Of a stretch of DNA of 64,000 nt, positions 1 through 13,252 are shown one piece after another. The notes under the pieces were generated by a model. The model saw nothing but the letters and a program-made list of their open reading frames with translations. It was not told where the DNA came from and ran no database searches. Made by a program: the position numbers and the translations under genes. Position 1 is the first letter of the stretch, and every line of letters begins with the position of its first letter. Origin of the DNA: Dimorphilus gyrociliatus (taxonomy: Eukaryota > Animalia > Annelida); NCBI GenBank assembly GCA_904063045.1, contig CAJFCJ010000024.1, positions 987,777 to 1,051,776 of the forward strand. The letters are read 5' to 3'.

Positions 1-271
1 GATTCCTTCTTCCTCCATCTCTCTCTCTCTCATTCCTTCTTCTTTCTCTCTTTTATCATTGATTAGCAGACTATTAAACAACAAGGAACAAAAGAAAATT
101 TTACCTTTTGATCTCCTATTGACTATTGAAAAACGTCATTTACCAATTAAATATATCGAATATGCAAAAGAATTTTGACCACCACTTTAAGTTTATTCTA
201 ATTATCAATATTTTTCTATTTAATATCAAAAATCAGTAATTTATAAAATGTTTTCCAATTTCCTTTGAAAG

Positions 272-708
272 TTTTGTACCTATCGAGTGTTTTACGTTCT
301 CGAATATGTGCTCATGCTCATCCTACGACGCACAGCAAACACGTTACGATTACTCTTATCGTTATTATCCTTCTCTTTATCCTACTAATGACACCTGCAG
401 AAATCATTGATTTAGTTTTAAATATAAGATCACCATCGAAAGGAAAAGGCAAGTTTTTAATGGCTTGCTGCAACTTGGTTAATATTATACAAGCTATGAA
501 TTTTGCTTTAAACTTTCTACTCTATACTTCATTTAATGCGACGTTTCGAAAAACTTTAATCTCTTTGACTAGAAGATGCTTTAGATTAAGAAGACCTTTT
601 GACGATAGAAATAGCCTAAGAACATCAATGACCAGCGTTCGAGTTAGAATAAAGCATACAGAAGAAATTCCGCTGCATCACTTGCACAAAAAACACTCGT
701 TTGCCTGA
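272..708 (+). CDS. Last coding exon of a class A (rhodopsin-family) peptide-receptor-like GPCR (TM6, TM7, helix 8, tail); upstream exons lie outside the window
   Basis: The ORF has a hydrophobic TM6 (VTITLIVIILLFILLMTP) and a TM7/helix-8 signature (NFALNFLLYTSFNATFRKTL) typical of invertebrate FMRFamide-receptor-like GPCRs. There is an AG acceptor at 270-271. Confidence 0.8.
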
Positions 709-2630: not shown

Positions 2631-5567
2631 AAAGCGAAGTTTTCATTATTAAATAACCTTGAGAATTCTAGTGTTTTATTCTAAATAAACCTAGATATGC
2701 TATTCTTTTTTTGACATAAAATTAAAGAAGCCGCTCAAGGGGTAAACCTCTAAAAAAAATTATTGTACCTTAGACACGCTAACATCTATCAAAATCTCCT
2801 CTATTGTATCTTATTTTTGATTGAGTATTTATCTCTTTTTATTTTATTCCTAGTGACCTCTGAAGTTTGTTAGCTTTATTTCCTAGAAATATATATTATT
2901 CTCAATATCGACTTTAATTTATGCATAAAATGTTTATTAGTTTCTTTTCATCTAAAATACTTTTCTTTCTATTTAAAATAGCTTGCTTTATAACATAAAA
3001 ATGTTTTACTGAATCATTACGTTTTAGCGTATGTTGTATATTTATAGCATGAACAATATGTAGTAAACTTTGCTCCTATTAAAAATTTTCCTCCATATTG
3101 ATAAGATGCTTTGACTTTAGAATACTTTGAACCATATGTACAACTCTACCGGATTTTGATCCTGATTCTTTCGATTTATATTCTCATATATGAAACTTCG
3201 AAAATATCTTTTAGTTTTAAAAACTATGTTTCACGGTGATAAAAAAGTATATGGTACTGTTTAGGCATTTCATTAATTTCTTTCATGTTCACCTAATTGA
3301 CATTGAAAACTGATCTTTCTTTTTATCCCAAACACTTAGCTATTTATGTTTATACTTGACTCACCTTCAGAAGTCTTCAGAATGTCATTATTAGTTTTAC
3401 TAATGAATTTACTTACTAAAACCATGTATACTCTCACCAATAAATATCATGTAGAAGAAATTTAAGAGTATAAGATCTAGGTAAATAATAAACCCCTATC
3501 TTCAATGGAAACTAAACCTTAAACATTCCTCTTGCGTTTAATTTAATAAAAGGGGTTATGAGTTGAATATCTTCTATTCTCTCATTCCTTCGTTGCTTTT
3601 GTCTCTTTTTACCTGTCGGAAATATTTACTTATAATGAAAGTAATTAGGATTATTATAATTATTAACATAAGAATTTCAAAAATTTAACAAATACATTAT
3701 TAAATGATAAATCTATTATGGTACAGTTGACACATGTTTGCGATTTGATTTGACAATTCTCTGTAAATCATGTACAGAATAGAGATGTTTTAAATTTCCG
3801 TATCTAATGAATTAAGAAACTATCTTTCGTTGAAGTAATATAGTTACATAATATCAATAAAGCTATTTATTTGTTCTGTTAGGATCAAAATCAATATTTC
3901 TATGAAATGAGCCATTGCGTGACAAAAAGAAACAGCATTCTATATACTATAGATTCTGTTCTTCAGTTTATTCAGGTCTTTTTTATTGTTTGTCGGTGAT
4001 CTATGTAAAATTTAAACTAAAACGAAATATAAATCAATCTACAGCAAAACGGATTCGTGTAACTCGCCTGCAGGGATCAGTATTAGGCAAGTCGAGTGAA
4101 TAAACAATGTAACCAACGTCATGCTGATTTCAGTTCGGTTCGCATCAGAGTTACTCAAAAGAGCGTAAAAGGACTACAAAAATTTAAGTCTGTAAGAATT
4201 TTCAATACGTAAATTCTCAGTTAATAAGAAATAACGTATTTTAACATCCAAGTTTTATAAATAAGACATGAATACTGATTTGTTATATCAAACAAATCAG
4301 TAACAAATCGTTAACGTCGTTTACATTCTCAATTCAGCTACTAGTGCTTTACGACTGCTAGTCTTTGGTCAGTCACCTTTCAATCCCCTGGTCGGTCATA
4401 CTCTTAATCTTAGTATCTCTTCTATAATCGAAGAGAATACTGTAAAGTCATATTCTCAAGTTTTTTTCGACCAAGGTTAGCTAGGGAGCCGAATTACTAA
4501 TGAAATGCTTTCCTTCAAATTTATTTCGACTATCAGACATAGACTAAGTTTACAACTTAATTTACAAACAGATGCGCACGATACGCAGACAGTAAGAGAA
4601 AGAAAAATACACCTTAATCCTTTTCCATAAGAATGTTATAGAAGAAAACAATAATGGATCTACTAAAGAAAAATCAAAACAATGCCAGATTCGCCAATTA
4701 CATAACATTACTTCTATTAATTAAGAATGCTGCTTCCTTCTAGGAAGTTCTTAGTTTAAGCAAATTATCAGATGCGATGATCGACATCGATAACCAGACG
4801 AAACAATGTTACAGGTAAAATTTCACCCAGTATGTAAATAAACTGCAAAATTAAACTAGTTCATAAGTTTGGAGTTATTTATTAATAGAAAAAGCAATCG
4901 ATACTAGGTAATAAAAGTAACCTTTTTGAATGACAAGGTTGGCAACCTCAAGCATAATTAGGTCGTAACACCAGACGAAAAACTATATATTGGATATACT
5001 AATAGGATTTATTTTGTTAAAACTAAACTTTACTGTTATTATGATACTATATAAGTATCAATCACCTTATATCTATCTCTACGCTAAAGCCATTCTTCTT
5101 AGCTTATAGTGGATATATATAAGATAGAACTCAGGAAACCGATTAGAAGTACTAATTGTCCTTTCAGAACTCGAGTAAAGACCATTGTCGCGATATATTT
5201 CTAAGAATTTTACGTAATAGAGTCTCTAATAAACACACGTATTTATAATTTATTGAAACTCTTTATCGATGCATTGACAACTTATATAATTAGATAAAAA
5301 AACACCCTTTTCGTTTATTTCTCACCGTTTCTTTTTTTAGAACGCCATCTGGTGATTGTTTAAACTGCGATTTGTTCATACTATAGTCACTACCTACGCC
5401 CTTTAATATTTTACTATATGATATTAAAAAATGCGGACCTTCAGAGTCAATACTTGCCTTTGAATCACCAACATACGGGGTATACAAACACGCCCTTCTT
5501 CGGTAATTGAATGCTGCGGGTTCAAATTTTTTCAAGATTATCAAAAAGTAATTGATTTATTACGAAA

Positions 5568-8500
5568 ATGTCACTTAATCTGGAGGCGAATAAAAAGTAC
5601 ACACATGTAAGTAAAATAGCTATCATAATTAATAAGGTTTCGTAATTTCTTTAAGAGATTATGCGGTTCTATTTATTAAATGCTATACAATATCAAGTCT
5701 TATATGCTTCTCTTTATTGATTTTTGCAGTTCTCCGTACCAATAAATGAAAGTCTTCCACTCAGCATCAAAGTAAAGGCAGTTGTTGAGAAAAAGGAAGA
5801 AGTGGTAGAAAATGTCGTATCCATTGAAAAGTATGTTCACGAGAAGGATATTCTTATTGGTCAGCTAAATGTCGAAAAAGAGAGGCAAAGAGAACTTGAA
5901 ATTCAAATAGAGAGGCTAAAAAGTGAACAAGAGTCTCAGAGATTACAGATTGAGTTGAAAAGGCAAGAAGCAGAAAAACATTATGAAGAACAGGAATTAA
6001 ACATGAGAAACCAATTGAAAATGTTGCAAGAACAACAAGAAATTGAAAGGAAAAGAATTCTAGAGGAACAACTCATTCAACAGGAACATTTAAGACATCA
6101 ATTGGAACGACAAATTAAAATACAAGAAGAACTAAAAGTAACCAGCGGCGAGTCTGTTCAAAAATATGCTGAAGAGCAGGTGAATAAACAATTTATATTT
6201 ATTTATTTAAAAAAACATATTCTATCGATCTTAAAGTCTATTCTAACCTTCTAGTTTTCTCTCATTTTCATTCAATTGAAAGATAAGTGAGTTATTTTTC
6301 TTCAGGTTAAAATTCTCCTTGAACAAAGAGATGCGGGAAAAAAAAAAGAAAAAGTCACAGTTGAACATAGCACAAACACTGATTTTCAAATTCCAGAGGT
6401 GGTTACTAAAGAGACTATTATAATTGATCACAGCACGCATGAAAAAGAGGTGGAAAAAAAAAAAGAAACAATTACAGTTGAACATAGCACAAACACTGAT
6501 TTTCCAGAAATAGTTACAAAAGAAACTATTGTAATTGATAATAATCAACAACTCAGTGAAATTGAAAAATTATGGAAAGAGAAATTTGACATGCAATTAA
6601 GACAACATGAGAGATTTATTGAAGATCAGCAACAAATACACTTGAAACAGAGAGAAGTACTCGAAATGCAATTGTCGGGTGAAAGAGAAAAGCAATTCAA
6701 TCTGGAGAGAGAGCTTGACGATCTAAAATTTCAACAGGAGCAACAACGTTCTGCTTTTGAAAGGGAAAGGGAAGAACAGCTAAAAATGCAAGAATATCAA
6801 AGTCAACAAATGCAAGAACAATTGCTTTTAATTAAACTTGAACAAGAGCAGAAACAAACTGCTGAAACTCATATTATACACGAAAAATGGATATTAGAAC
6901 AAAAAGAACAGCTAGATGAAATTGAGAAAATATGGAAAGAGAAATTTGAGATTCAACAACAGCAACAGTTAAAATATTCTCAAGAACAACAAGCACTTCA
7001 TTTCAAACAACAGCAATTACTTGCTGAGCAATTGGAGGAAGAAAGAGAGAAACAGCATCGCTTAGAAATAGAATTATCCGAAATGAAAGCTGCGCAAGAT
7101 CAACAATTGCTTATTTTTGAACAGCAAAGAGAACAACAGATAAAAATTCAAGAGATGCAACAAATACAAATGCAAGAACAAATAAAACTTTTACAGGAAC
7201 AACAGGAGGCTGAGAGAATTAGGATGATTGAAGAGCAACAAATACAAAAAACAATTTTAGAGAGAGAATTAGAGCAGAAACTTATGATGAAAACACAAGA
7301 AAAAGAAATAATTACTAAGCAGCAAATAACTCAACAGCAAATATTGCAAGAGAGTCTTCTTGAAGAGCATCGAAGACAAATGGAAGAGATGGAAAGACTT
7401 TGGAGAGAAAAGTTTGATCAACAGAGATTAGAGCAAGAACGTCTATCGAGAGATCAGGAGTTAGCTTACGAAAGACAAAAACAACTGCTTGAGCAGCAAC
7501 TAGAAGAGGAAAGAAGAAAGCAAATAAGTGTTGAAGAGCAAATGCTGCAAATGAAAAAAATACAGGAGCAGCAACACTATGATTTTGAACAACAACGCCT
7601 TGAACAGAATAAAACTAGAGAATTCCAACAAAATCAATGGAAAGAACAATTAAGATTATTACAAGAGCAAAAGGAAACAGAGAGAATACAAATTCTAAAG
7701 GATCAACTTCAACAGCAGAACGATCTTAAGGATCAATTGAAAAAAGAACTTAATCAACAGCAGATAGAAAAAGAATTAGTAATGCAGCAGCAACTTGAAC
7801 AACAAAGACTTCTTCAGGAACAGTACGACCAACAGAAACTACTTCAAGAACAAATGATGGAAGAGCAAAGAAGGAAAGCCGAAGAGGCCGAAAGAGTATG
7901 GAGAGAAAAGATGGCTCTTCAACAACAGCAACAACAACAACAGCAAAAGCTAATTGACATAAAAAAATCAGAAATTAAAGAGATTCGAACTCGGCAAATG
8001 GTACCCTCCATAAACGGAAATGCTCCCTACAACTTCGTTACAGAAGAGGATGCAACAAGAAAATTAGTTCTGAGCAGTCTTGAGAGAAAAGCTCACGTTC
8101 ACAGTCAGATAAACTACGATTCGGGGAAAAGTGGCACCCCTGAGCCGGTTAGAACTCCATTTATTCCCGTTACGACCAGCCCTCCCAATACACAACCAAG
8201 TGGGCAAGCGCTGTCACCAGTTTCGACTGGATTTTATACCCCACCACCCCCAGCTACTGATATTATACCCGAAGTAGCTTTCAGACCTCCAATGTCTTAT
8301 AGTAAGCAAGAAGAGGAAGTAGTAATACGGAACGACGTTATCAATGAGTACGAAGGATCTCGTGGAAGTTCACCAGTAACCGATATGGATTTTGAAACAA
8401 AAAACCAGTTTTCTTCGAGTTCTTCTTCATCTTCGTCATTTGTGGACTTAAATTCTACTTCACCTGCCGCCGCACTCCTACAAACTTCAGCGAAAGCAGA

Positions 8501-9827
8501 GCAATCTGTTTCAGTCACTAAGACGATTACCAGCACTGCAGTTGTGAAGAAATCTGATGAATCTATTCAAAAGACTGAGCAAACGAGAAAACTTGAAGCT
8601 AAAAGTTCATTGGTAATTCCTACTTCAGAGGTAGACGGCACAACTTCAACAGCAAATGAAGATAGGAAGAACATGGTTGTAGCTATTCCTCAACCACCTC
8701 CTGTACTGCCTGCAGTAAAGGAGATTAAACCCGCTTCAGTTTTGAAAAATACTGATGAATCTTTTCAAAAGGCAATTGAAAAGCAAAAGAAAAAATTAGA
8801 AGAAAAAAGTATGGAAGCTAAGGCTACTTCTCAGGTGTCTTCTACTAAAACTACTTCTGTCTTGAAGAGGAGCGAAGAGTCTTCTGTAACCACAGCAAAA
8901 GTTCAAGATTCAGTGTCAAGTCAAAAACTTATAAGCGACGCTTTACATGACAGGTTCCAAGAAGCAGTGCCCGGATATCGAAAAGATTATATAGGTTCTT
9001 CAACCTCTTCTCTGAATACTGAAAGGCCTAAATCGGAACTACCCGACATAAAACCCGTTGTCGGCGATCCACATATTAAGTTGGACGAAGATGAAGACGA
9101 CGATGAGGAGACGATTGCAGACTATATTCCAGAAGATGATGGATGGAAAGATGGAGTAACGAGAGTTATACACATACAAGATAAATACACTCACGTATTA
9201 ATAAAGGTTAGAGTTGAGAAGGCTACGGCAAAAAATAATCCTATGCTTATCGAGTTCCTCTTCAAAGTTGCACAATTTACTCTACATCAATTTAAGAAGA
9301 GAAAGATTGAAAAGGTATAACCAGTGCTATATTTAAGATGTCGTCTTTTGCAAACTATTCTTTTCTTTTTTCAGTTAAATTTTACAGAATCGGCTCTCAA
9401 TGCCCTCAAGGTAGAACCTGACAATTTCCCCCTAAGTGATCACTTTGAGCAATTGGGCAATAAAATAAACAGTAAAGTTGCTATTCGTGGGGCAGTTTGT
9501 CGAAGATTTACTGGTCAGTCTCATGTGGGAGGAGAGATTGATGGTACTATAAAATCAGAATTAAAATGTACTATTGGAACATCCGGAGTGCTTGTAGTTC
9601 TCCATAAGACAAACAGACTCGCCCCAGCCGCAGAATTTTGTCAGCAAATTTGCGAACACATCCTTAAATTAAAGCCAAAGACGTTGGGAGTGCAAAAGTC
9701 GATTTCCCGAATAGAACCCGCTGGTTGCCTATTAGCACAAAAATTCTTAAGAGATAATACCATAAACATAGCCGATGCAGCTAGAAGATGTATGGTTCAA
9801 ATAGCAGAATTCGTATTTTGGGCTTAA
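5568..9827 (+). CDS. Large Gln/Glu-rich coiled-coil protein (~1,316 aa) with a Ser/Thr/Pro-rich linker and a C-terminal degenerate EF-Ts-like domain; exons ~5568-5606, 5730-6179, 6306-9314, 9375-9827
   Basis: Three long ORFs join in frame through GT-AG introns, all phase 0. The 13-codon first exon (ATG...CAT|gtaagt) is tentative. The last ~205 aa align by eye with the mitochondrial EF-Ts core. Confidence 0.8.
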
Positions 9828-10656
9828 TTATCATATTTAATGTTTTTATACTAATCAATACTTCAAAATGTTGAAAATTCAAGAACATTGATAATCAAGT
9901 ATAAAAAGGAGGAAAATTTTTGAAATTGGTAATAACTTAAAAAATACTAATCAGTCTTTTTTTCCGTACAATTTATAGCAATGATAACAGTTGTTAGAGT
10001 TTGAATATGCCTATTTATCTAAATATACATCATTTAAATTATTTTAAGTATATATATATAAATACATTATAAATTTATATATACTGAATATATATATATA
10101 TATATAGACAGTATTTAGTTACATTTTCTGTTATTATTATCTATTATTATCATCATTATCAAGCATACTCTTAAATTCATATATCATAGAAGTATCAGCA
10201 CGTTCCAATTTTCAACTCAGATTTAAATATATTTATGATATCGTATATAGACATTTTCTCTTCGTTTTTTTTCAATATTCCGTATAAAACTATATAATTA
10301 AAAAGAAAATTATGGGCTCCATTTCAAGGGATTATCGATATAAAGAGAAAAACATAAAAAAAATAACATCCTACATTCGTACGAAGATGAAATATCAATG
10401 TTTTATTTTTAGTGATGAATTGTTCTTATTTTTAGTTTTCTCAATAAAAAAGTGAAAAAAAAAGGCTGTCAACTTATGGAAAAAATATTCAAATAAAAAA
10501 ATATAAAGTAGGAAACAAACTAAAAGTAAAGAAAGAAAAAAGACAGATAAAGAGAAAAAAATGGATTATTAGTACCTGATACAGAAAATTTTCATAAATA
10601 TATATACATATATATACACTATATATATATACATATACAGACTATTTACAGCTAAT

Positions 10657-13252
10657 TCAAGAGCTTTTTCCCAACTCTTTTTGCAATCCATGATAAGAAT
10701 AGACATCGTATCGCTGATGACAAATATCGGGACCATATTCTAAATATTCTTTTCGGGAAACTGAATGCTTGGCGAATTTTCCACTTTCTTCGTAATATTT
10801 TCCACCTTTCCACGCGTACGTACGAGGACTTTATTTATAGAAGAGATTTTAAAATTAAACTTAATAATATATTATAAAGTATCTAAAATTAAAATTACTC
10901 TGTAACATCGAAAACACCGCAAAACGGAACAGTTTCAGGTTTATCAGGTTCAATTTCTCGTAATCTGAAACATTTAAGTGAAAAAATGGTAATAATAGAG
11001 CAGTCAGTTGATATTTTGCCAAAAATTTAACAATATAAAACAAGTAAAAGAGTGTACTTACAGTCTTTTAGCAAAACCAGGAAATTTACAAGTAGCACCC
11101 GTTAAAAGAATATTCGCGTATAAATTACATGCAATTTCTGAAAATAGTTTTAAATTGTTGAATATCTTGAATAAAGGTTAATAGAAAAGGAATACCTGAC
11201 GGAAACCTATTACAAACATCTACTAAAGCTTCTCCAATTCCCATTTCGGTAAATCCGACATCTGTTGGATTAAAGAGTAATTCTGGAATCGAAAATCTCT
11301 CGTTGTTCATTTTCACAGCTTGTTCCTAGTTAATTTATTTAAGAGTTTAGTCAACAAACAGAACAGCATTTCGAGTTTTTAATTAATCTTACATGATCAC
11401 TTTGTTCTTTTAATTGTTTCTTGCTTAATGGATATCTTACGACACCTCTTTGCCGTGTTGAAAAATCTGGTAGAACATATTCTCTGACGATTTTATTTTC
11501 TGGGTAATTCGATCTAAAAGGTGTATGATAGAAACAAAATGAAAGCAATTGGAAAATAGACATTATTAGCTCTCTCTTCAAGATAAAGTAAATAGCTTTT
11601 TTCCTTTTACCTGCTGTGCTTTAAATCGTCGTTAAAATCCAAACTTACATAACATAGATCTTCTTTCATCTGATTGACAACATAAGTTTCTGACATCATC
11701 ATCATTTGCCTTTAAAAAAATACATCGTATGGTAATTCCATCTATCGGAGAAAGAGGTAAACGGGAAAAGGACAAATGATTACCTATATGAAATTGTTTC
11801 TTTTAAATGGTTTGTTAAAATTTTGCCTCCAACGTTTATTCTAAAAATAATAATTTTTATTATTTTTAACATTCGATCTATTAAATAGAGCAAACCTGCA
11901 AACAGCTTGATCAATACGAGTTCCTTTGACGTATGGTATTATGTGAGTAAAGCTGTATCCGGAATCAATTATTATGCAATCTTTTTCAGGAATAAGTTTT
12001 AAGTGAGACGTGTCAACTTTTTCGGCTTGGTATTTAGCAAAAGATAAATCCGATGCTGTCAATAATTGTGAAATAAAGAACAAATATTCTGTATATGATA
12101 ATATTCAATAAAGTGTGATATATCATTTACAGTTTATACAGTACATATATACTGTATATATATATACATATACATGGATAAATACTGTTAAAATGCAGTA
12201 TATTACTCTATTTTAACTATCATTTAACAAGTTCTTTAAGGAAATGGAATACTGAATTTTTGTTTTGTTTATATTAACTTTATCAAAATAAATAGCTTTA
12301 ATTCATTCCAATTTCACGTGCTTTAATTTAGTAAACTGTTAACCAGATGTGGGACAATGTTTGTAAACTATTTAAGCAAGCCATCATTAAACGTCAAAAG
12401 AGATGGAAAAGGGTTAAGGGATGCCAATGCGACCCTAAACAAACGCATAGGAGTCTCTTTACCTTTTAAACCCGGTAAGTAAATATTGAACAATAAATAA
12501 TTTAATGGGAATAAGAGTAGTTTCTAAACCCTTATATACAATTGAATTTAATTAAGAACTTTTTGGCTCTTTCAGCAAACATTTATTATAATATAGAGTA
12601 AACTTTAATAAAAAGAAATAAAAGAAATACGTACGATGCACTCTCGAAATGCGATTAAATTGAAATTCTTCAAATAGAATTTCGTCCATAGCATCCTGTA
12701 TTGGTACTAAATTCATATATGGTTCAGTTATTATTACGTTACAATCTTCGTAATCAACCTAATAAAAAATGCTTTATTATATAAATTAATCTCTTAAATG
12801 GACGTATTAACTTTTTTTATATCAGGTTTGGAAAACATATAAGACCATATCTGTTTCTCTAAATCCCAATTTGTAAGAAAACCCTAAAAAGCGAAACAGG
12901 GTTATAATAATAATAAAGAGAACCATAAACAAGATATACCCTTTGGAATGGGAGCATATAATACAGGCTTGTGAGATCTTTGCATTCCTTAATCAAATCA
13001 CCAATGAATGACCTTGTTCTAACGTGCTTGGCTTTATAAATGCAATTTGGTATAATTCTGGTAGGAAAAAAAGCGGCTGGGCGATAATATGATAAATTGG
13101 TAAATATTTAAATTTTAACAAAAACTACAGTTTTTTTCTTATACATTGGAGTGAAACTTTAATTTTTTTATTATAACTTACAACGGATTCTCATCAGTCG
13201 TGTAACCAACTTTGATTTCGTAAGCACCGTTATCAAGAATAAGGGTGGCCAT
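10657..13252 (-). CDS. ACTR6: Actin-related protein 6 (SWR1/SRCAP complex subunit), multi-exon with mostly short introns
   Basis: Spliced translation gives MATLILDNGAYEIKVGY..., VIITEPYMN, CIIIDSGYSFTHIIPY, EYVLPDFST, NERFSIPELLFNPTDVG and PRTYAWKGGK, all matching ARP6. The stop TGA is at 10657-10659. Confidence 0.95.

What the first reader, a model, noticed from the sequence alone, without database searches (positions are those of the whole stretch)
9150..9827. Degenerate mitochondrial-type EF-Ts core fused to the C-terminus of a giant coiled-coil protein
Seen: the last ~205 aa are in one reading frame with the coiled coil. Alignment by eye to human TSFM, recalled from memory, is nearly gap-free: KDGVTRVI vs KEGLIGLL; VLIKVRVE vs VLVEVNCE; PLSDHF...K vs SLKDQL...K; HVGGEIDG vs YVGSYVHG; IGTSGVLVV vs LGKYGALVI; ICEHILKLKPKTLG vs LGQHVVGMAPLSVG; LLAQKFLRDNTI vs MLSQPYLLDPSI; VQIAEFV vs VSVVDFV. 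The phase-0 intron (IEK|LNF) appears to fall at the TSFM YSK|GFL junction, which I recall as an exon boundary and which needs checking. Established: EF-Ts uses the (E)TDFV motif to displace Mg2+/GDP from EF-Tu and needs its N-terminal helical domain. Here the motif reads EKATA, and the N-terminal domain and transit peptide are absent. Inference: a duplicated TSFM was recruited as a non-catalytic module on a ~1,100-aa rod, an architecture I do not recognise.
Basis: partly seen in the sequence, partly recalled or inferred. Interest (0 to 1): 0.85.

Follow-up and report, generated by a model that had tools for sequence, protein, structure and literature searches.

The report
Dead EF-Ts domain on helical protein
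A small marine worm makes a 1,316-residue protein whose last 205 residues are a degenerate copy of the mitochondrial translation factor EF-Ts; it belongs to a small, unstudied family of such "dead EF-Ts" proteins, which means a housekeeping factor was reused for an unknown purpose.

Summary
Window 9150-9314 plus 9375-9824 encode one domain, joined by a 60-nt phase-0 GT..AG intron that a 3,429-nt spliced contig crosses. The gene has four exons (5568-9827) and encodes 1,316 aa.

The domain is a true EF-Ts core of the mitochondrial type:
- Pfam EF_TS is the only family hit. It is sub-threshold here but above threshold in three relatives.
- A family profile finds only bovine mitochondrial EF-Ts in the PDB (E 4e-9).
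- AlphaFold models match 1xb2_B (Z 21.7, 205 residues, 2.8 A).

The catalytic signatures are gone. TDFV reads KATA, and its Phe is absent in every relative. The GEN motif and the N-terminal UBA-like domain are also missing.

The interpretation needs correcting. This is not a local TSFM duplicate grafted onto a rod. It is a member of an older, uncharacterised family; the only named member is Helobdella HELRODRAFT_159474. The family consists of an N-terminal short motif, a disordered spacer and a C-terminal pseudo-EF-Ts. The roughly 700-aa Q/E-rich helical stretch is the lineage-specific insert. It shows no heptad periodicity but has excess i/i+4 charge pairs.

The intron is ancestral to the family. 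Its identity with a TSFM exon boundary could not be tested, and the function is unknown.

The parts
5568..5606 (+). Exon 1: start codon plus 12 codons; an in-frame TGA lies upstream at 5553
   Evidence: Sequence; spliced contigs of X1 and X2 join about 5603/5606 to 5730
5730..6179 (+). Exon 2 (150 codons): N-terminal family motif and the start of the Q/E-rich helical region
   Evidence: X2 contig joins 5606|5730 and 6176|6303 with GT..AG ends; sequence
5730..5774 (+). N-terminal short motif FSVPINESLPLSIKV, shared with relatives (VYSVPLQTTATINI type)
   Evidence: Alignment A7; identical in ortholog L003. The motif is short, so significance is modest
6306..9314 (+). Exon 3 (1,003 codons): helical repeats, S/T/P-rich linker and the first 55 residues of the EF-Ts-like domain
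   Evidence: ORF; X2 contig covers 6475-9312
5871..8096 (+). Q/E/K/R-rich helical region, aa 61-760 (spans the intron 6180-6305). Four repeats are marked by [LIV]W[KR]EK[FM] at aa 252, 372, 528 and 694. No Pro or Gly between aa 289 and 729
   Evidence: Composition Q20 E19 L11 K10 %. No heptad periodicity: z -0.9 at period 3.5 and 1.1 at period 7. i/i+4 opposite-charge pairs 81 against 48.7 +/- 5.6 in shuffles. 68-77% identical to ortholog L003
8097..9149 (+). S/T/P-rich, probably disordered linker (aa 761-1111) with a few conserved islands
   Evidence: Composition S15 T9 P9 %. 33-58% identity with indels against L003, pN 0.33
9150..9314 (+). EF-Ts-like core, first part: beta-hairpin, degenerate TDFV loop and helix
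   Evidence: Family profile match starts at aa 1112, which is nt 9150. Aligns to bovine EF-Ts chain residues 67 onward through the family profile
9219..9230 (+). Position of the EF-Ts TDFV motif; here it reads K-A-T-A
   Evidence: The loop differs even in ortholog L003, which also has a 3-aa insertion
9315..9374 (+). 60-nt phase-0 GT..AG intron inside the domain; ancestral to the family
   Evidence: Spliced X2 contig. Same position and phase in L001 (acceptor at 8739|8740) and in L013. 58 nt in L003
9375..9827 (+). Exon 4: the remaining 150 residues of the EF-Ts-like core plus the stop codon. The protein ends right after the last beta-strand
   Evidence: Pfam EF_TS; PDB 1xb2_B; model and Foldseek; 76% identical to L003 with pN 0.154 and pS 0.724
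9768..9797 (+). Family-specific signature IADAARRCMV (consensus VAEAARRSFV); the most conserved block of the family and not an EF-Ts feature
   Evidence: Alignments A3, A6, A8 and the C-terminal alignment
9828..9963 (+). 3' untranslated region
   Evidence: X2 contig ends at 9963; an X1 contig covers 9654-9904

Best explanation
Shown. The gene at 5568-9827 (+) is real, expressed and spliced, has four exons and encodes 1,316 aa. Its last 205 residues fold as the two-lobed core of elongation factor Ts and are closest to the mitochondrial form.

Shown. The protein belongs to a small uncharacterised eukaryotic family. The only named member is the leech protein HELRODRAFT_159474. The common plan is a short N-terminal motif, a variable and mostly disordered spacer, and a C-terminal EF-Ts core that ends at the last beta-strand.

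Shown. In this family the Phe of the TDFV motif is never kept. That Phe is the residue EF-Ts pushes into EF-Tu to expel Mg2+/GDP. The GEN motif and the His of the YxHG turn, both listed as EF-Tu contacts, are replaced. The N-terminal UBA-like EF-Ts domain is absent.

Inferred. The domain no longer catalyses nucleotide exchange. It acts as a binding module (a pseudo-GEF). Its functional surface is probably the family-specific pair of helices FSxQLCxHI and VAEAARRSF in the second lobe.

Inferred. The protein is not imported into mitochondria, because the N-terminus is not presequence-like.

Inferred. In this worm's lineage the spacer grew into about 700 aa of tandemly repeated, charged, Pro/Gly-free helix. 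That would hold the N-terminal motif and the C-terminal module far apart, as a spacer or tether. The binding partner is unknown. It could be an EF-Tu-like GTPase or something new.
For: Gene model and splice. Expression was seen in two studies, X2 and the coral metatranscriptome X1.

Homology to EF-Ts:
- Pfam EF_TS is the only consistent family. The window's exon 4 scores 20.1 bits. P0018, P0007 and P0002 score 28.3, 29.9 and 30.8 bits, above the cut-off of 27.
- The family profile's only PDB hit is 1xb2_B, E 4.1e-9, over profile positions 13-220.
- The AlphaFold model of relative P0007 has pLDDT 86.8 and pTM 0.82.
- Foldseek gives 1xb2_B at E 1.6e-16 and TM 0.75, and all 20 significant hits are EF-Ts.
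- VIA-align gives Z 21.7, rmsd 2.8 A, 205 residues; unrelated folds score 5.8 or less.
- The best ESM Atlas match by shape is 'Elongation factor Ts, mitochondrial', TM 0.80.
- The window's own exon 4 model hits 1xb2_B at E 5.4e-7.
- A family profile built without this lineage covers the spliced protein at aa 1112-1315, 131 bits.

Selection: against ortholog L003 the domain has pN 0.157 and pS 0.731, and the rod has 0.144 and 0.863. The architecture and the downstream actin-like gene are conserved.

Loss of catalytic features: alignments. The role of TDFV, Asp80/Phe81, Ile125/Gly126 and His147 is taken from PMC3747624.

Family plan.
Against: - No experiment or partner prediction was possible, so 'binding module' and 'non-catalytic' rest on missing motifs only.
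- An acidic residue (E or D) persists at the Asp80 position in most relatives, though not in the window. The helix His and the P..LG motif shared with EF-Ts are kept. Some EF-Tu-type contact therefore cannot be excluded.
- The AlphaFold model of the whole domain is of a relative that is about 32% identical, not of the window protein. The spliced sequence could not be submitted by reference.
- Localisation was judged by eye only.
- The N-terminal motif is short and its match is weak.
Confidence: 0.8

Rival explanations
1. The domain is still a working regulator of an EF-Tu-type GTPase. It would bind mitochondrial EF-Tu, or a cytosolic relative such as eEF1A, through the retained second lobe. 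It would then either exchange nucleotide weakly or sequester and tether the factor along the long helix.
For: - The whole two-lobed core is kept under purifying selection.
- The helix His, the following P..LG and the LL.Q.F..D.T block shared with true EF-Ts are nearly invariant in the family.
- Most relatives keep an acidic residue at the Asp80 position.
Against: - Phe81, the Gly126 (GEN) equivalent and the His147 equivalent are replaced throughout the family.
- The TDFV loop is not conserved even between the two closest orthologs, which also differ by an indel there.
- The N-terminal EF-Ts domain that contacts the EF-Tu G domain is absent.
- The strongest conservation is in a family-specific motif, AEAARRSF, that EF-Ts lacks.
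Confidence: 0.15
2. The resemblance to EF-Ts is chance or convergence, and the domain has an unrelated origin.
For: - The window's own Pfam score is below the curated cut-off (20.1 against 27).
- Its single-sequence PDB E-value is only 0.012.
- Identity to EF-Ts is 13-21%.
Against: - Three relatives pass the Pfam cut-off.
- The profile E-value is 4e-9, with no other PDB family hit at E up to 1.
- Z is 21.7 over 205 residues, against 5.8 or less for other folds.
- Language-model features point independently to EF_TS.
- Colinear motifs run along the whole domain.
Confidence: 0.02
3. The gene model is an artefact: two neighbouring genes, or a decaying pseudogene, read as one.
For: The domain is split by an intron, and the 972-aa exon 3 segment tested (window 6399-9314) has no Pfam hit above the cut-off.
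Against: - One spliced contig spans 6475-9963.
- The domain begins 55 residues before the intron, inside the large exon.
- The ortholog has the same layout, with a 58-nt intron that must be spliced.
- pN is far below pS.
- There are no stops or frameshifts in 1,316 codons.
Confidence: 0.01

Closest known systems
Mitochondrial elongation factor Ts (TSFM; bovine EF-Tu/EF-Ts complex, PDB 1XB2 chain B)
   Same: - Same two-lobed core fold (Z 21.7, rmsd 2.8 A, 205 residues).
- It is the only PDB sequence hit of the family profile (E 4e-9).
- Like the mitochondrial form, the family lacks the long coiled-coil hairpin of E. coli EF-Ts.
- Shared sequence blocks: the G..G.LV hairpin, the helix with His followed by P..(L/V)G, and LL.Q.(F/Y)..D..I.
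   Different: - No N-terminal UBA-like domain and no presequence-like N-terminus.
- TDFV is replaced by KATA, and Phe is never kept in the family.
- The GEN motif and the His of the YxHG turn are lost.
- The protein stops right after the last strand.
- The domain sits at the end of a 1,100-residue non-EF-Ts region.
- It carries a family-specific AEAARRSF motif.
Hypothetical protein HELRODRAFT_159474 of the leech Helobdella robusta and unnamed relatives (P0024, P0025, P0004, P0018, P0002)
   Same: - Same C-terminal pseudo-EF-Ts domain with the same signatures.
- Same end point of the protein.
- Similar N-terminal motif.
- The domain is preceded by an acidic stretch and a GW dipeptide.
   Different: - They are 361-598 aa, with a disordered S/G/T-rich or acidic spacer and no long helical repeat region.
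- The window protein is only about 30-45% identical to them in the domain.
- The window protein lacks their roughly 19-residue basic loop.
PETs / PSRP-7-EF-Ts polyprotein of green algae and plants (plastid EF-Ts fused to S1 domains). Cited from my own knowledge, not checked here.
   Same: A rare case of an EF-Ts module encoded in one reading frame with unrelated domains.
   Different: There the EF-Ts units are canonical and active and serve plastid translation. Here the module has lost its catalytic signatures.
Charged single alpha-helix (ER/K-type) spacers such as those of myosin VI/X and caldesmon. Cited from my own knowledge.
   Same: Long Pro/Gly-free E/Q/K/R-rich sequence with an excess of i/i+4 opposite charges and no heptad pattern.
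   Different: The region is much richer in Gln and Leu than classical ER/K helices and is built of repeats of about 120-165 residues. Whether it is monomeric or pairs as a coiled coil was not determined.

Membership tests
Elongation factor Ts (Pfam PF00889 EF_TS; functional EF-Tu nucleotide exchange factor) | EF-Ts core fold with subdomains N and C | tested here: met
   - Relative P0007 model against 1xb2_B: Foldseek E 1.6e-16, VIA Z 21.7.
- Window exon 4 model against 1xb2_B: E 5.4e-7.
Elongation factor Ts (Pfam PF00889 EF_TS; functional EF-Tu nucleotide exchange factor) | Sequence score above the Pfam gathering cut-off (27 bits) | tested here: inconclusive
   - Window exon 4 alone scores 20.1 bits and L003 exon 4 scores 19.8.
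- The spliced domain could not be submitted.
- Relatives P0018, P0007 and P0002 pass at 28.3-30.8 bits. P0024, P0025, P0026 and P0004 do not, at 21.9-25 bits.
Elongation factor Ts (Pfam PF00889 EF_TS; functional EF-Tu nucleotide exchange factor) | TDFV motif (E. coli Asp80/Phe81) that displaces Mg2+/GDP from EF-Tu | tested here: not met
   - The window reads KATA and L003 reads RGKD.
- Relatives read TEAV, TEKV, TEEA, TEKA, HEST and TDEM.
- Phe is absent in all.
- The role of the motif is taken from PMC3747624.
Elongation factor Ts (Pfam PF00889 EF_TS; functional EF-Tu nucleotide exchange factor) | N-terminal UBA-like domain (EF-Ts_N) that contacts the EF-Tu G domain | tested here: not met
   No Pfam EF-Ts_N or UBA hit in the window's exons or in the full-length relatives P0002, P0024, P0025 and P0026. 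The profile match to 1xb2_B starts at chain residue 67.
Elongation factor Ts (Pfam PF00889 EF_TS; functional EF-Tu nucleotide exchange factor) | Other EF-Tu contact residues: the Ile125/Gly126 'GEN' motif and His147 of the YxHG turn | tested here: not met
   - The HMM alignment places family consensus q-l-n-e opposite bovine L-G-E-N.
- It places 's' opposite the His of VHG.
- The window has G-N-K and I-D-G. L003 has A-K-K.
- The contact list comes from PMC3747624. Mapping it to E. coli numbering rests partly on my memory of that sequence.
Elongation factor Ts (Pfam PF00889 EF_TS; functional EF-Tu nucleotide exchange factor) | Mitochondrial (or plastid/bacterial) location and GDP-exchange activity | not testable with these tools
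   The N-terminus has acidic residues at positions 6 and 20 and no Arg, so it does not look like a presequence. No predictor or assay was available.
Unnamed pseudo-EF-Ts family (HELRODRAFT_159474-like) | EF-Ts core at the extreme C-terminus, with the signatures FSxQLCxHI...P..LG and LL.Q.F..D.TI.VAEAARRSFV.I.DF | tested here: met
   - The window reads FCQQICEHI...P..LG and LLAQKFLRDNTINIADAARRCMVQIAEF, and ends 4 residues later.
- The profile built without this lineage gives 131 bits.
Unnamed pseudo-EF-Ts family (HELRODRAFT_159474-like) | Short N-terminal motif (V/F)(Y/S)(S/V)(V/P)P(L/I)(Q/N)....(L/I)(N/S)I near residue 15-45 | tested here: inconclusive
   It is present as FSVPINESLPLSIKV at aa 14-28 and is identical in L003. 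It aligns with VYSVPLQTT.T(I/L)NI of P0024, P0025 and P0026. The motif is too short for a statistical test.
Unnamed pseudo-EF-Ts family (HELRODRAFT_159474-like) | Phase-0 intron 14-15 residues before the conserved D(G/N/R) of the L.L.DG turn | tested here: met
   It is seen in the window at 9314|9375, in L003 at 4145|4204, in L001 at acceptor 8739|8740, and in L013 (acceptor ...tctctag|GTGCGC).
Canonical two-stranded coiled coil | Heptad periodicity of hydrophobic residues | tested here: not met
   - a/d occupancy is 0.416 against 0.435 +/- 0.012 in shuffles.
- Fourier power gives z -0.9 at period 3.5 and z 1.1 at period 7.
- This was my own crude test, not COILS or Marcoil.

The most novel reading that the evidence does not exclude
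Animals, at least annelids and about a dozen further unidentified eukaryotic lineages, carry an ancient cytosolic paralogue of mitochondrial EF-Ts. It has lost exchange activity but still docks onto an EF-Tu-fold GTPase, such as the TUFM precursor, eEF1A or a relative. It would act as a pseudo-GEF that tethers or sequesters that factor. The N-terminal motif would anchor the other end, and in dinophilid worms a helical spacer of up to roughly 100 nm would set the distance between the two ends.
Probability: 0.2. Interest if true: 0.8.

Novelty: new variant of a known kind. Interest (0 to 1): 0.62.

Why it matters
EF-Ts is treated as a single-purpose housekeeping factor that is confined to bacteria and organelles. 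Outside plastid polyproteins, and apart from its capture by RNA phage replicases, I know of no described case where its fold was reused.

This gene shows that the mitochondrial EF-Ts core was duplicated and stripped of its catalytic motif and N-terminal domain. It has been kept under selection at the end of otherwise disordered or helical proteins in several lineages.

This gives a concrete pseudoenzyme family to test:
- Does a dead exchange factor still bind a translational GTPase?
- What is the AEAARRSF surface for?

The family is invisible to routine annotation. The leech member and the window protein score below the Pfam cut-off, and the leech member is labelled hypothetical.

The dinophilid version also shows a disordered spacer being replaced by a 700-residue repeated charged helix.

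Tried and rejected
- Word-indexed homology search with alignment A2 returned three proteins. Low-complexity words from the first sequence probably swamped it, so it was uninformative.
- The same search with the trimmed alignment A6 added only exon-sized fragments and again the leech protein. No other named animal protein was found in the 128-406 aa length window. Longer members cannot be excluded.
With A8 it gave four loci, and only L013 added anything new.
- Literature searches found nothing on such a domain in animals. I searched for EF-Ts-like or TSFM-like domains, for the Pfam and InterPro accessions, and for the sample and locus identifiers.
- An ESM Atlas feature search of the N-terminal 70 residues of P0024 gave no usable hit.
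- Including the short exon 3 pieces in a MAFFT alignment misplaced them on the second lobe. I left them out of the alignments used for folding and profiles.
- P0017, a hit at E 7.7e-4, is a low-complexity repeat protein. I discarded it.
- The DNA around P0023, which sits on a 2.1-Mb contig, could not be fetched.
- The TSFM exon boundary could not be checked. PMC6434145 has no exon information, and no TSFM gene was within reach.
- The spliced 208-aa domain could not be submitted to Pfam, PDB or AlphaFold, because it has no reference and reading through a stop is barred. Instead I used exon 4 by reference, a relative for the whole domain, and a local HMM in the sandbox.
The read-laying run used 5,501 letters.
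Full report
**1. What is in the sequence**

On the + strand a long open frame (6399-9320) ends in ...KKRKIEK followed by GTATAA. After 60 nt and a TTTTCAG acceptor, a second open stretch in the same frame runs from 9375 to the stop at 9825-9827.

Laying two public runs on 4900-10400 (5,501 letters) gave direct evidence for the splice:
- Run X2 has a 3,429-nt contig that lies on 6475-9312 and continues at 9373-9963. It skips 60 nt with GT..AG ends. Its contigs are spliced, so it is transcript-derived.
- The same run joins 5606|5730 and about 6179|6306.
- A second, independent study (X1, a coral metatranscriptome) has 95-99% identical contigs on exons only and shows the first junction.

Together with the sequence this gives the gene model. 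Exon 1 is 5568-5606 (ATG at 5568, in-frame TGA at 5553). Exon 2 is 5730-6179. Exon 3 is 6306-9314. Exon 4 is 9375-9827. All introns are phase 0. The protein is 1,316 aa with no internal stop.

**2. The C-terminal domain is an EF-Ts core**

- Exon 4 alone (150 aa) hits Pfam EF_TS at E 5.2e-4. The score is 20.1 bits, below the curated cut-off of 27.
- Its best PDB sequence match is bovine mitochondrial EF-Ts, 1xb2_B. The match is E 0.012, query residues 8-147 against chain residues 127-269, nearly gap-free.
- Language-model features point to EF_TS clusters.
- An exhaustive phmmer search of 1.84 billion representatives found only 17 proteins. One is a 77% identical ortholog (P0001). The rest share 29-47% identity.
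- Three of the relatives pass the Pfam cut-off for EF_TS: P0018 at 28.3 bits, P0007 at 29.9 and P0002 at 30.8. JGI had auto-named P0007 'translation elongation factor EF-Ts'.
- A profile of 19 family sequences finds exactly one PDB sequence at E up to 1. It is 1xb2_B again, at E 4.1e-9, over profile positions 13-220 against chain 67-271. No bacterial EF-Ts reached the threshold.
- An AlphaFold model of relative P0007 is confident (pLDDT 86.8, pTM 0.82).
  - Foldseek puts 1xb2_B first (E 1.6e-16, TM 0.75), and all 20 significant hits are EF-Ts.
  - VIA-align gives Z 21.7, rmsd 2.8 A and 205 aligned residues for 1xb2_B. Bacterial EF-Ts score Z 18-20, and everything else scores 5.8 or less.
  - The best ESM Atlas match by shape is a cluster named 'Elongation factor Ts, mitochondrial' (TM 0.80).
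- The window's own exon 4 model is confident from residue 46 on. It also finds 1xb2_B first, at E 5.4e-7.
- An HMM built in the sandbox from the family without the window or its ortholog matches the spliced window protein as one domain. It covers aa 1112-1315 at 131 bits and runs straight across the exon junction.

**3. The gene is under selection and its layout is conserved**

Locus L003 is a Logan contig from another species. It has the same exon layout and the same actin-like gene downstream on the other strand. Its intron is 58 nt, so it cannot be read through.

| Region | Identity to L003 | pN | pS |
|---|---|---|---|
| Helical region | 68-77% | 0.144 | 0.863 |
| Linker | 33-58%, with indels | 0.329 | 0.79 |
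| EF-Ts-like domain | 73-76% | 0.157 | 0.731 |

Synonymous sites are saturated, while non-synonymous change is low in the helical region and the domain. This is not a pseudogene.

**4. Catalytic features are lost**

EF-Ts uses the strictly conserved TDFV motif (E. coli Asp80/Phe81), together with Ile125/Gly126 of subdomain N, to open the EF-Tu nucleotide site. It uses His147 and other residues of subdomain C to hold EF-Tu domain III (PMC3747624).

- At the TDFV position the window reads KATA (nt 9219-9230), and the close ortholog reads RGKD with a 3-aa insertion nearby.
- Other family members read TEAV, TEKV, TEEA, TEKA, HEST and TDEM.
- The Phe is never present.
- The GEN motif and the His of the VHG turn are also replaced.
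- No member has the N-terminal UBA-like EF-Ts domain.
- What is most conserved is a family-specific block, consensus VAEAARRSFV (IADAARRCMV here, nt 9768-9797). Next comes the helix FSxQLCxHI followed by P..LG.
- All members stop 4-6 residues after the last beta-strand.

From this I infer that exchange activity is lost and that a new or modified binding surface lies in the second lobe. That step is inference, not a result.

**5. The family, and what is special here**

A length-matched search starting from a relative's full ORF found P0024 (598 aa), P0025 (566 aa), P0004 and the only named member. That member is 'hypothetical protein HELRODRAFT_159474' of the leech Helobdella robusta, 361 aa. 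It scores 23.3 bits on EF_TS, below the cut-off, which explains why it is unannotated.

- These proteins and P0002 (a complete 466-aa ORF) have a disordered S/G/T-rich or acidic middle and no long helix.
- They share a short motif near the N-terminus, VYSVPLQTT.T(I/L)NI. The window has FSVPINESLPLSIKV at the start of exon 2. This is suggestive only, because the motif is short.
- At 60% identity the C-terminal 100 residues fall into 14 clusters. The family is therefore sparse but not confined to one lineage.
- Apart from the leech, the source organisms are unknown.

Other follow-up notes of this scan name the genome as the annelid Dimorphilus gyrociliatus. I did not verify this. It fits the 31% G+C content and the 60-nt introns.

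The pseudo-EF-Ts protein existed first, and the helical region was inserted or expanded in this lineage.

**6. The 'coiled coil'**

- Residues 61-760 are 39% Gln plus Glu.
- There is no Pro or Gly between residues 289 and 729.
- There are four repeats, marked by [LIV]W[KR]EK[FM] at aa 252, 372, 528 and 694.
- Hydrophobic residues show no heptad signal. The a/d occupancy is below that of shuffles, and Fourier analysis gives z -0.9 at period 3.5 and z 1.1 at period 7.
- Opposite charges at i/i+4 are enriched, 81 against 48.7 +/- 5.6.

This looks more like a charged single alpha-helix or a weakly pairing helix than a classical coiled coil. My test is crude, so the point stays open. Residues 761-1111 are S/T/P-rich linker, not rod.

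**7. The intron**

The phase-0 intron at K|LNF is also present at the same aligned position and phase in two distant family members:
- L001, with acceptor ...ctcctcag|GAGACA before ETMNATQMGQVIMADRR.
- L013, with ...tctctag|GTGCGC before VRLTPFHLNKMKLDDGR.

It is therefore ancestral to the family. The relatives have further introns that this compact genome lacks. Whether TSFM genes have an exon boundary there could not be tested.

**8. Comparison and verdict**

By fold and by descent this is an EF-Ts core of the mitochondrial type. By the defining functional features it is not an EF-Ts, because the TDFV motif, the N-terminal domain and the listed contact residues are not met. It belongs to an undescribed pseudo-EF-Ts family.

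I found no paper on such a domain in animals.

The best-supported reading is a non-catalytic binding module at the end of a spacer protein. A retained, non-catalytic grip on an EF-Tu-fold GTPase remains possible, at about 15-20%.

Novelty: a new variant of a known kind. Interest is moderate to high for people who study pseudoenzymes and the evolution of translation factors. It is limited by the lack of any functional handle.

Noticed in passing
window 10139-12100, minus strand: A multi-exon actin-fold gene (actin-related protein) lies tail-to-tail with the finding's gene. One exon gives a weak Pfam Actin hit (E 0.006). The same neighbour follows the ortholog in L003, so the synteny is conserved.
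   Followed up: partly
window 8097-9149 (aa 761-1111): Inside the poorly conserved linker, a few islands are nearly identical between the two species: NGNAPYNFV..EEDATRKLVLSSLERKAH, TGFYTPPPPATDI and ALHDRF.EAV.GYRKDY. They may be short binding motifs. No Pfam match.
   Followed up: no
window 6330-6470: Exon 3 begins with a short tandem duplication (…TVEHSTNTDF..PE(V/I)VTKETI(I/V)ID…, present twice). The ortholog L003 has it only once, so this is a recent 36-residue duplication in this species.
   Followed up: partly
L013 290-400: In this unidentified relative the TDFV position reads TDEM, so the Asp is kept and the Phe is lost. This is the least degenerate version seen and may be closest to the ancestral state of the family.
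   Followed up: no
L001 5926-7344: A reverse-transcriptase (RVT_1) retroelement sits inside the 4.4-kb intron that splits the pseudo-EF-Ts domain of this unidentified large-genome relative. A second contig (L002) carries a near-identical copy of the locus, probably the other haplotype.
   Followed up: no
window 265-708, plus strand: An open frame running in from the window's left edge looks like the C-terminal part of a seven-transmembrane receptor. Another note of the scan calls it an orphan peptide GPCR. Pfam gave no hit at E up to 0.01 for this fragment.
   Followed up: partly
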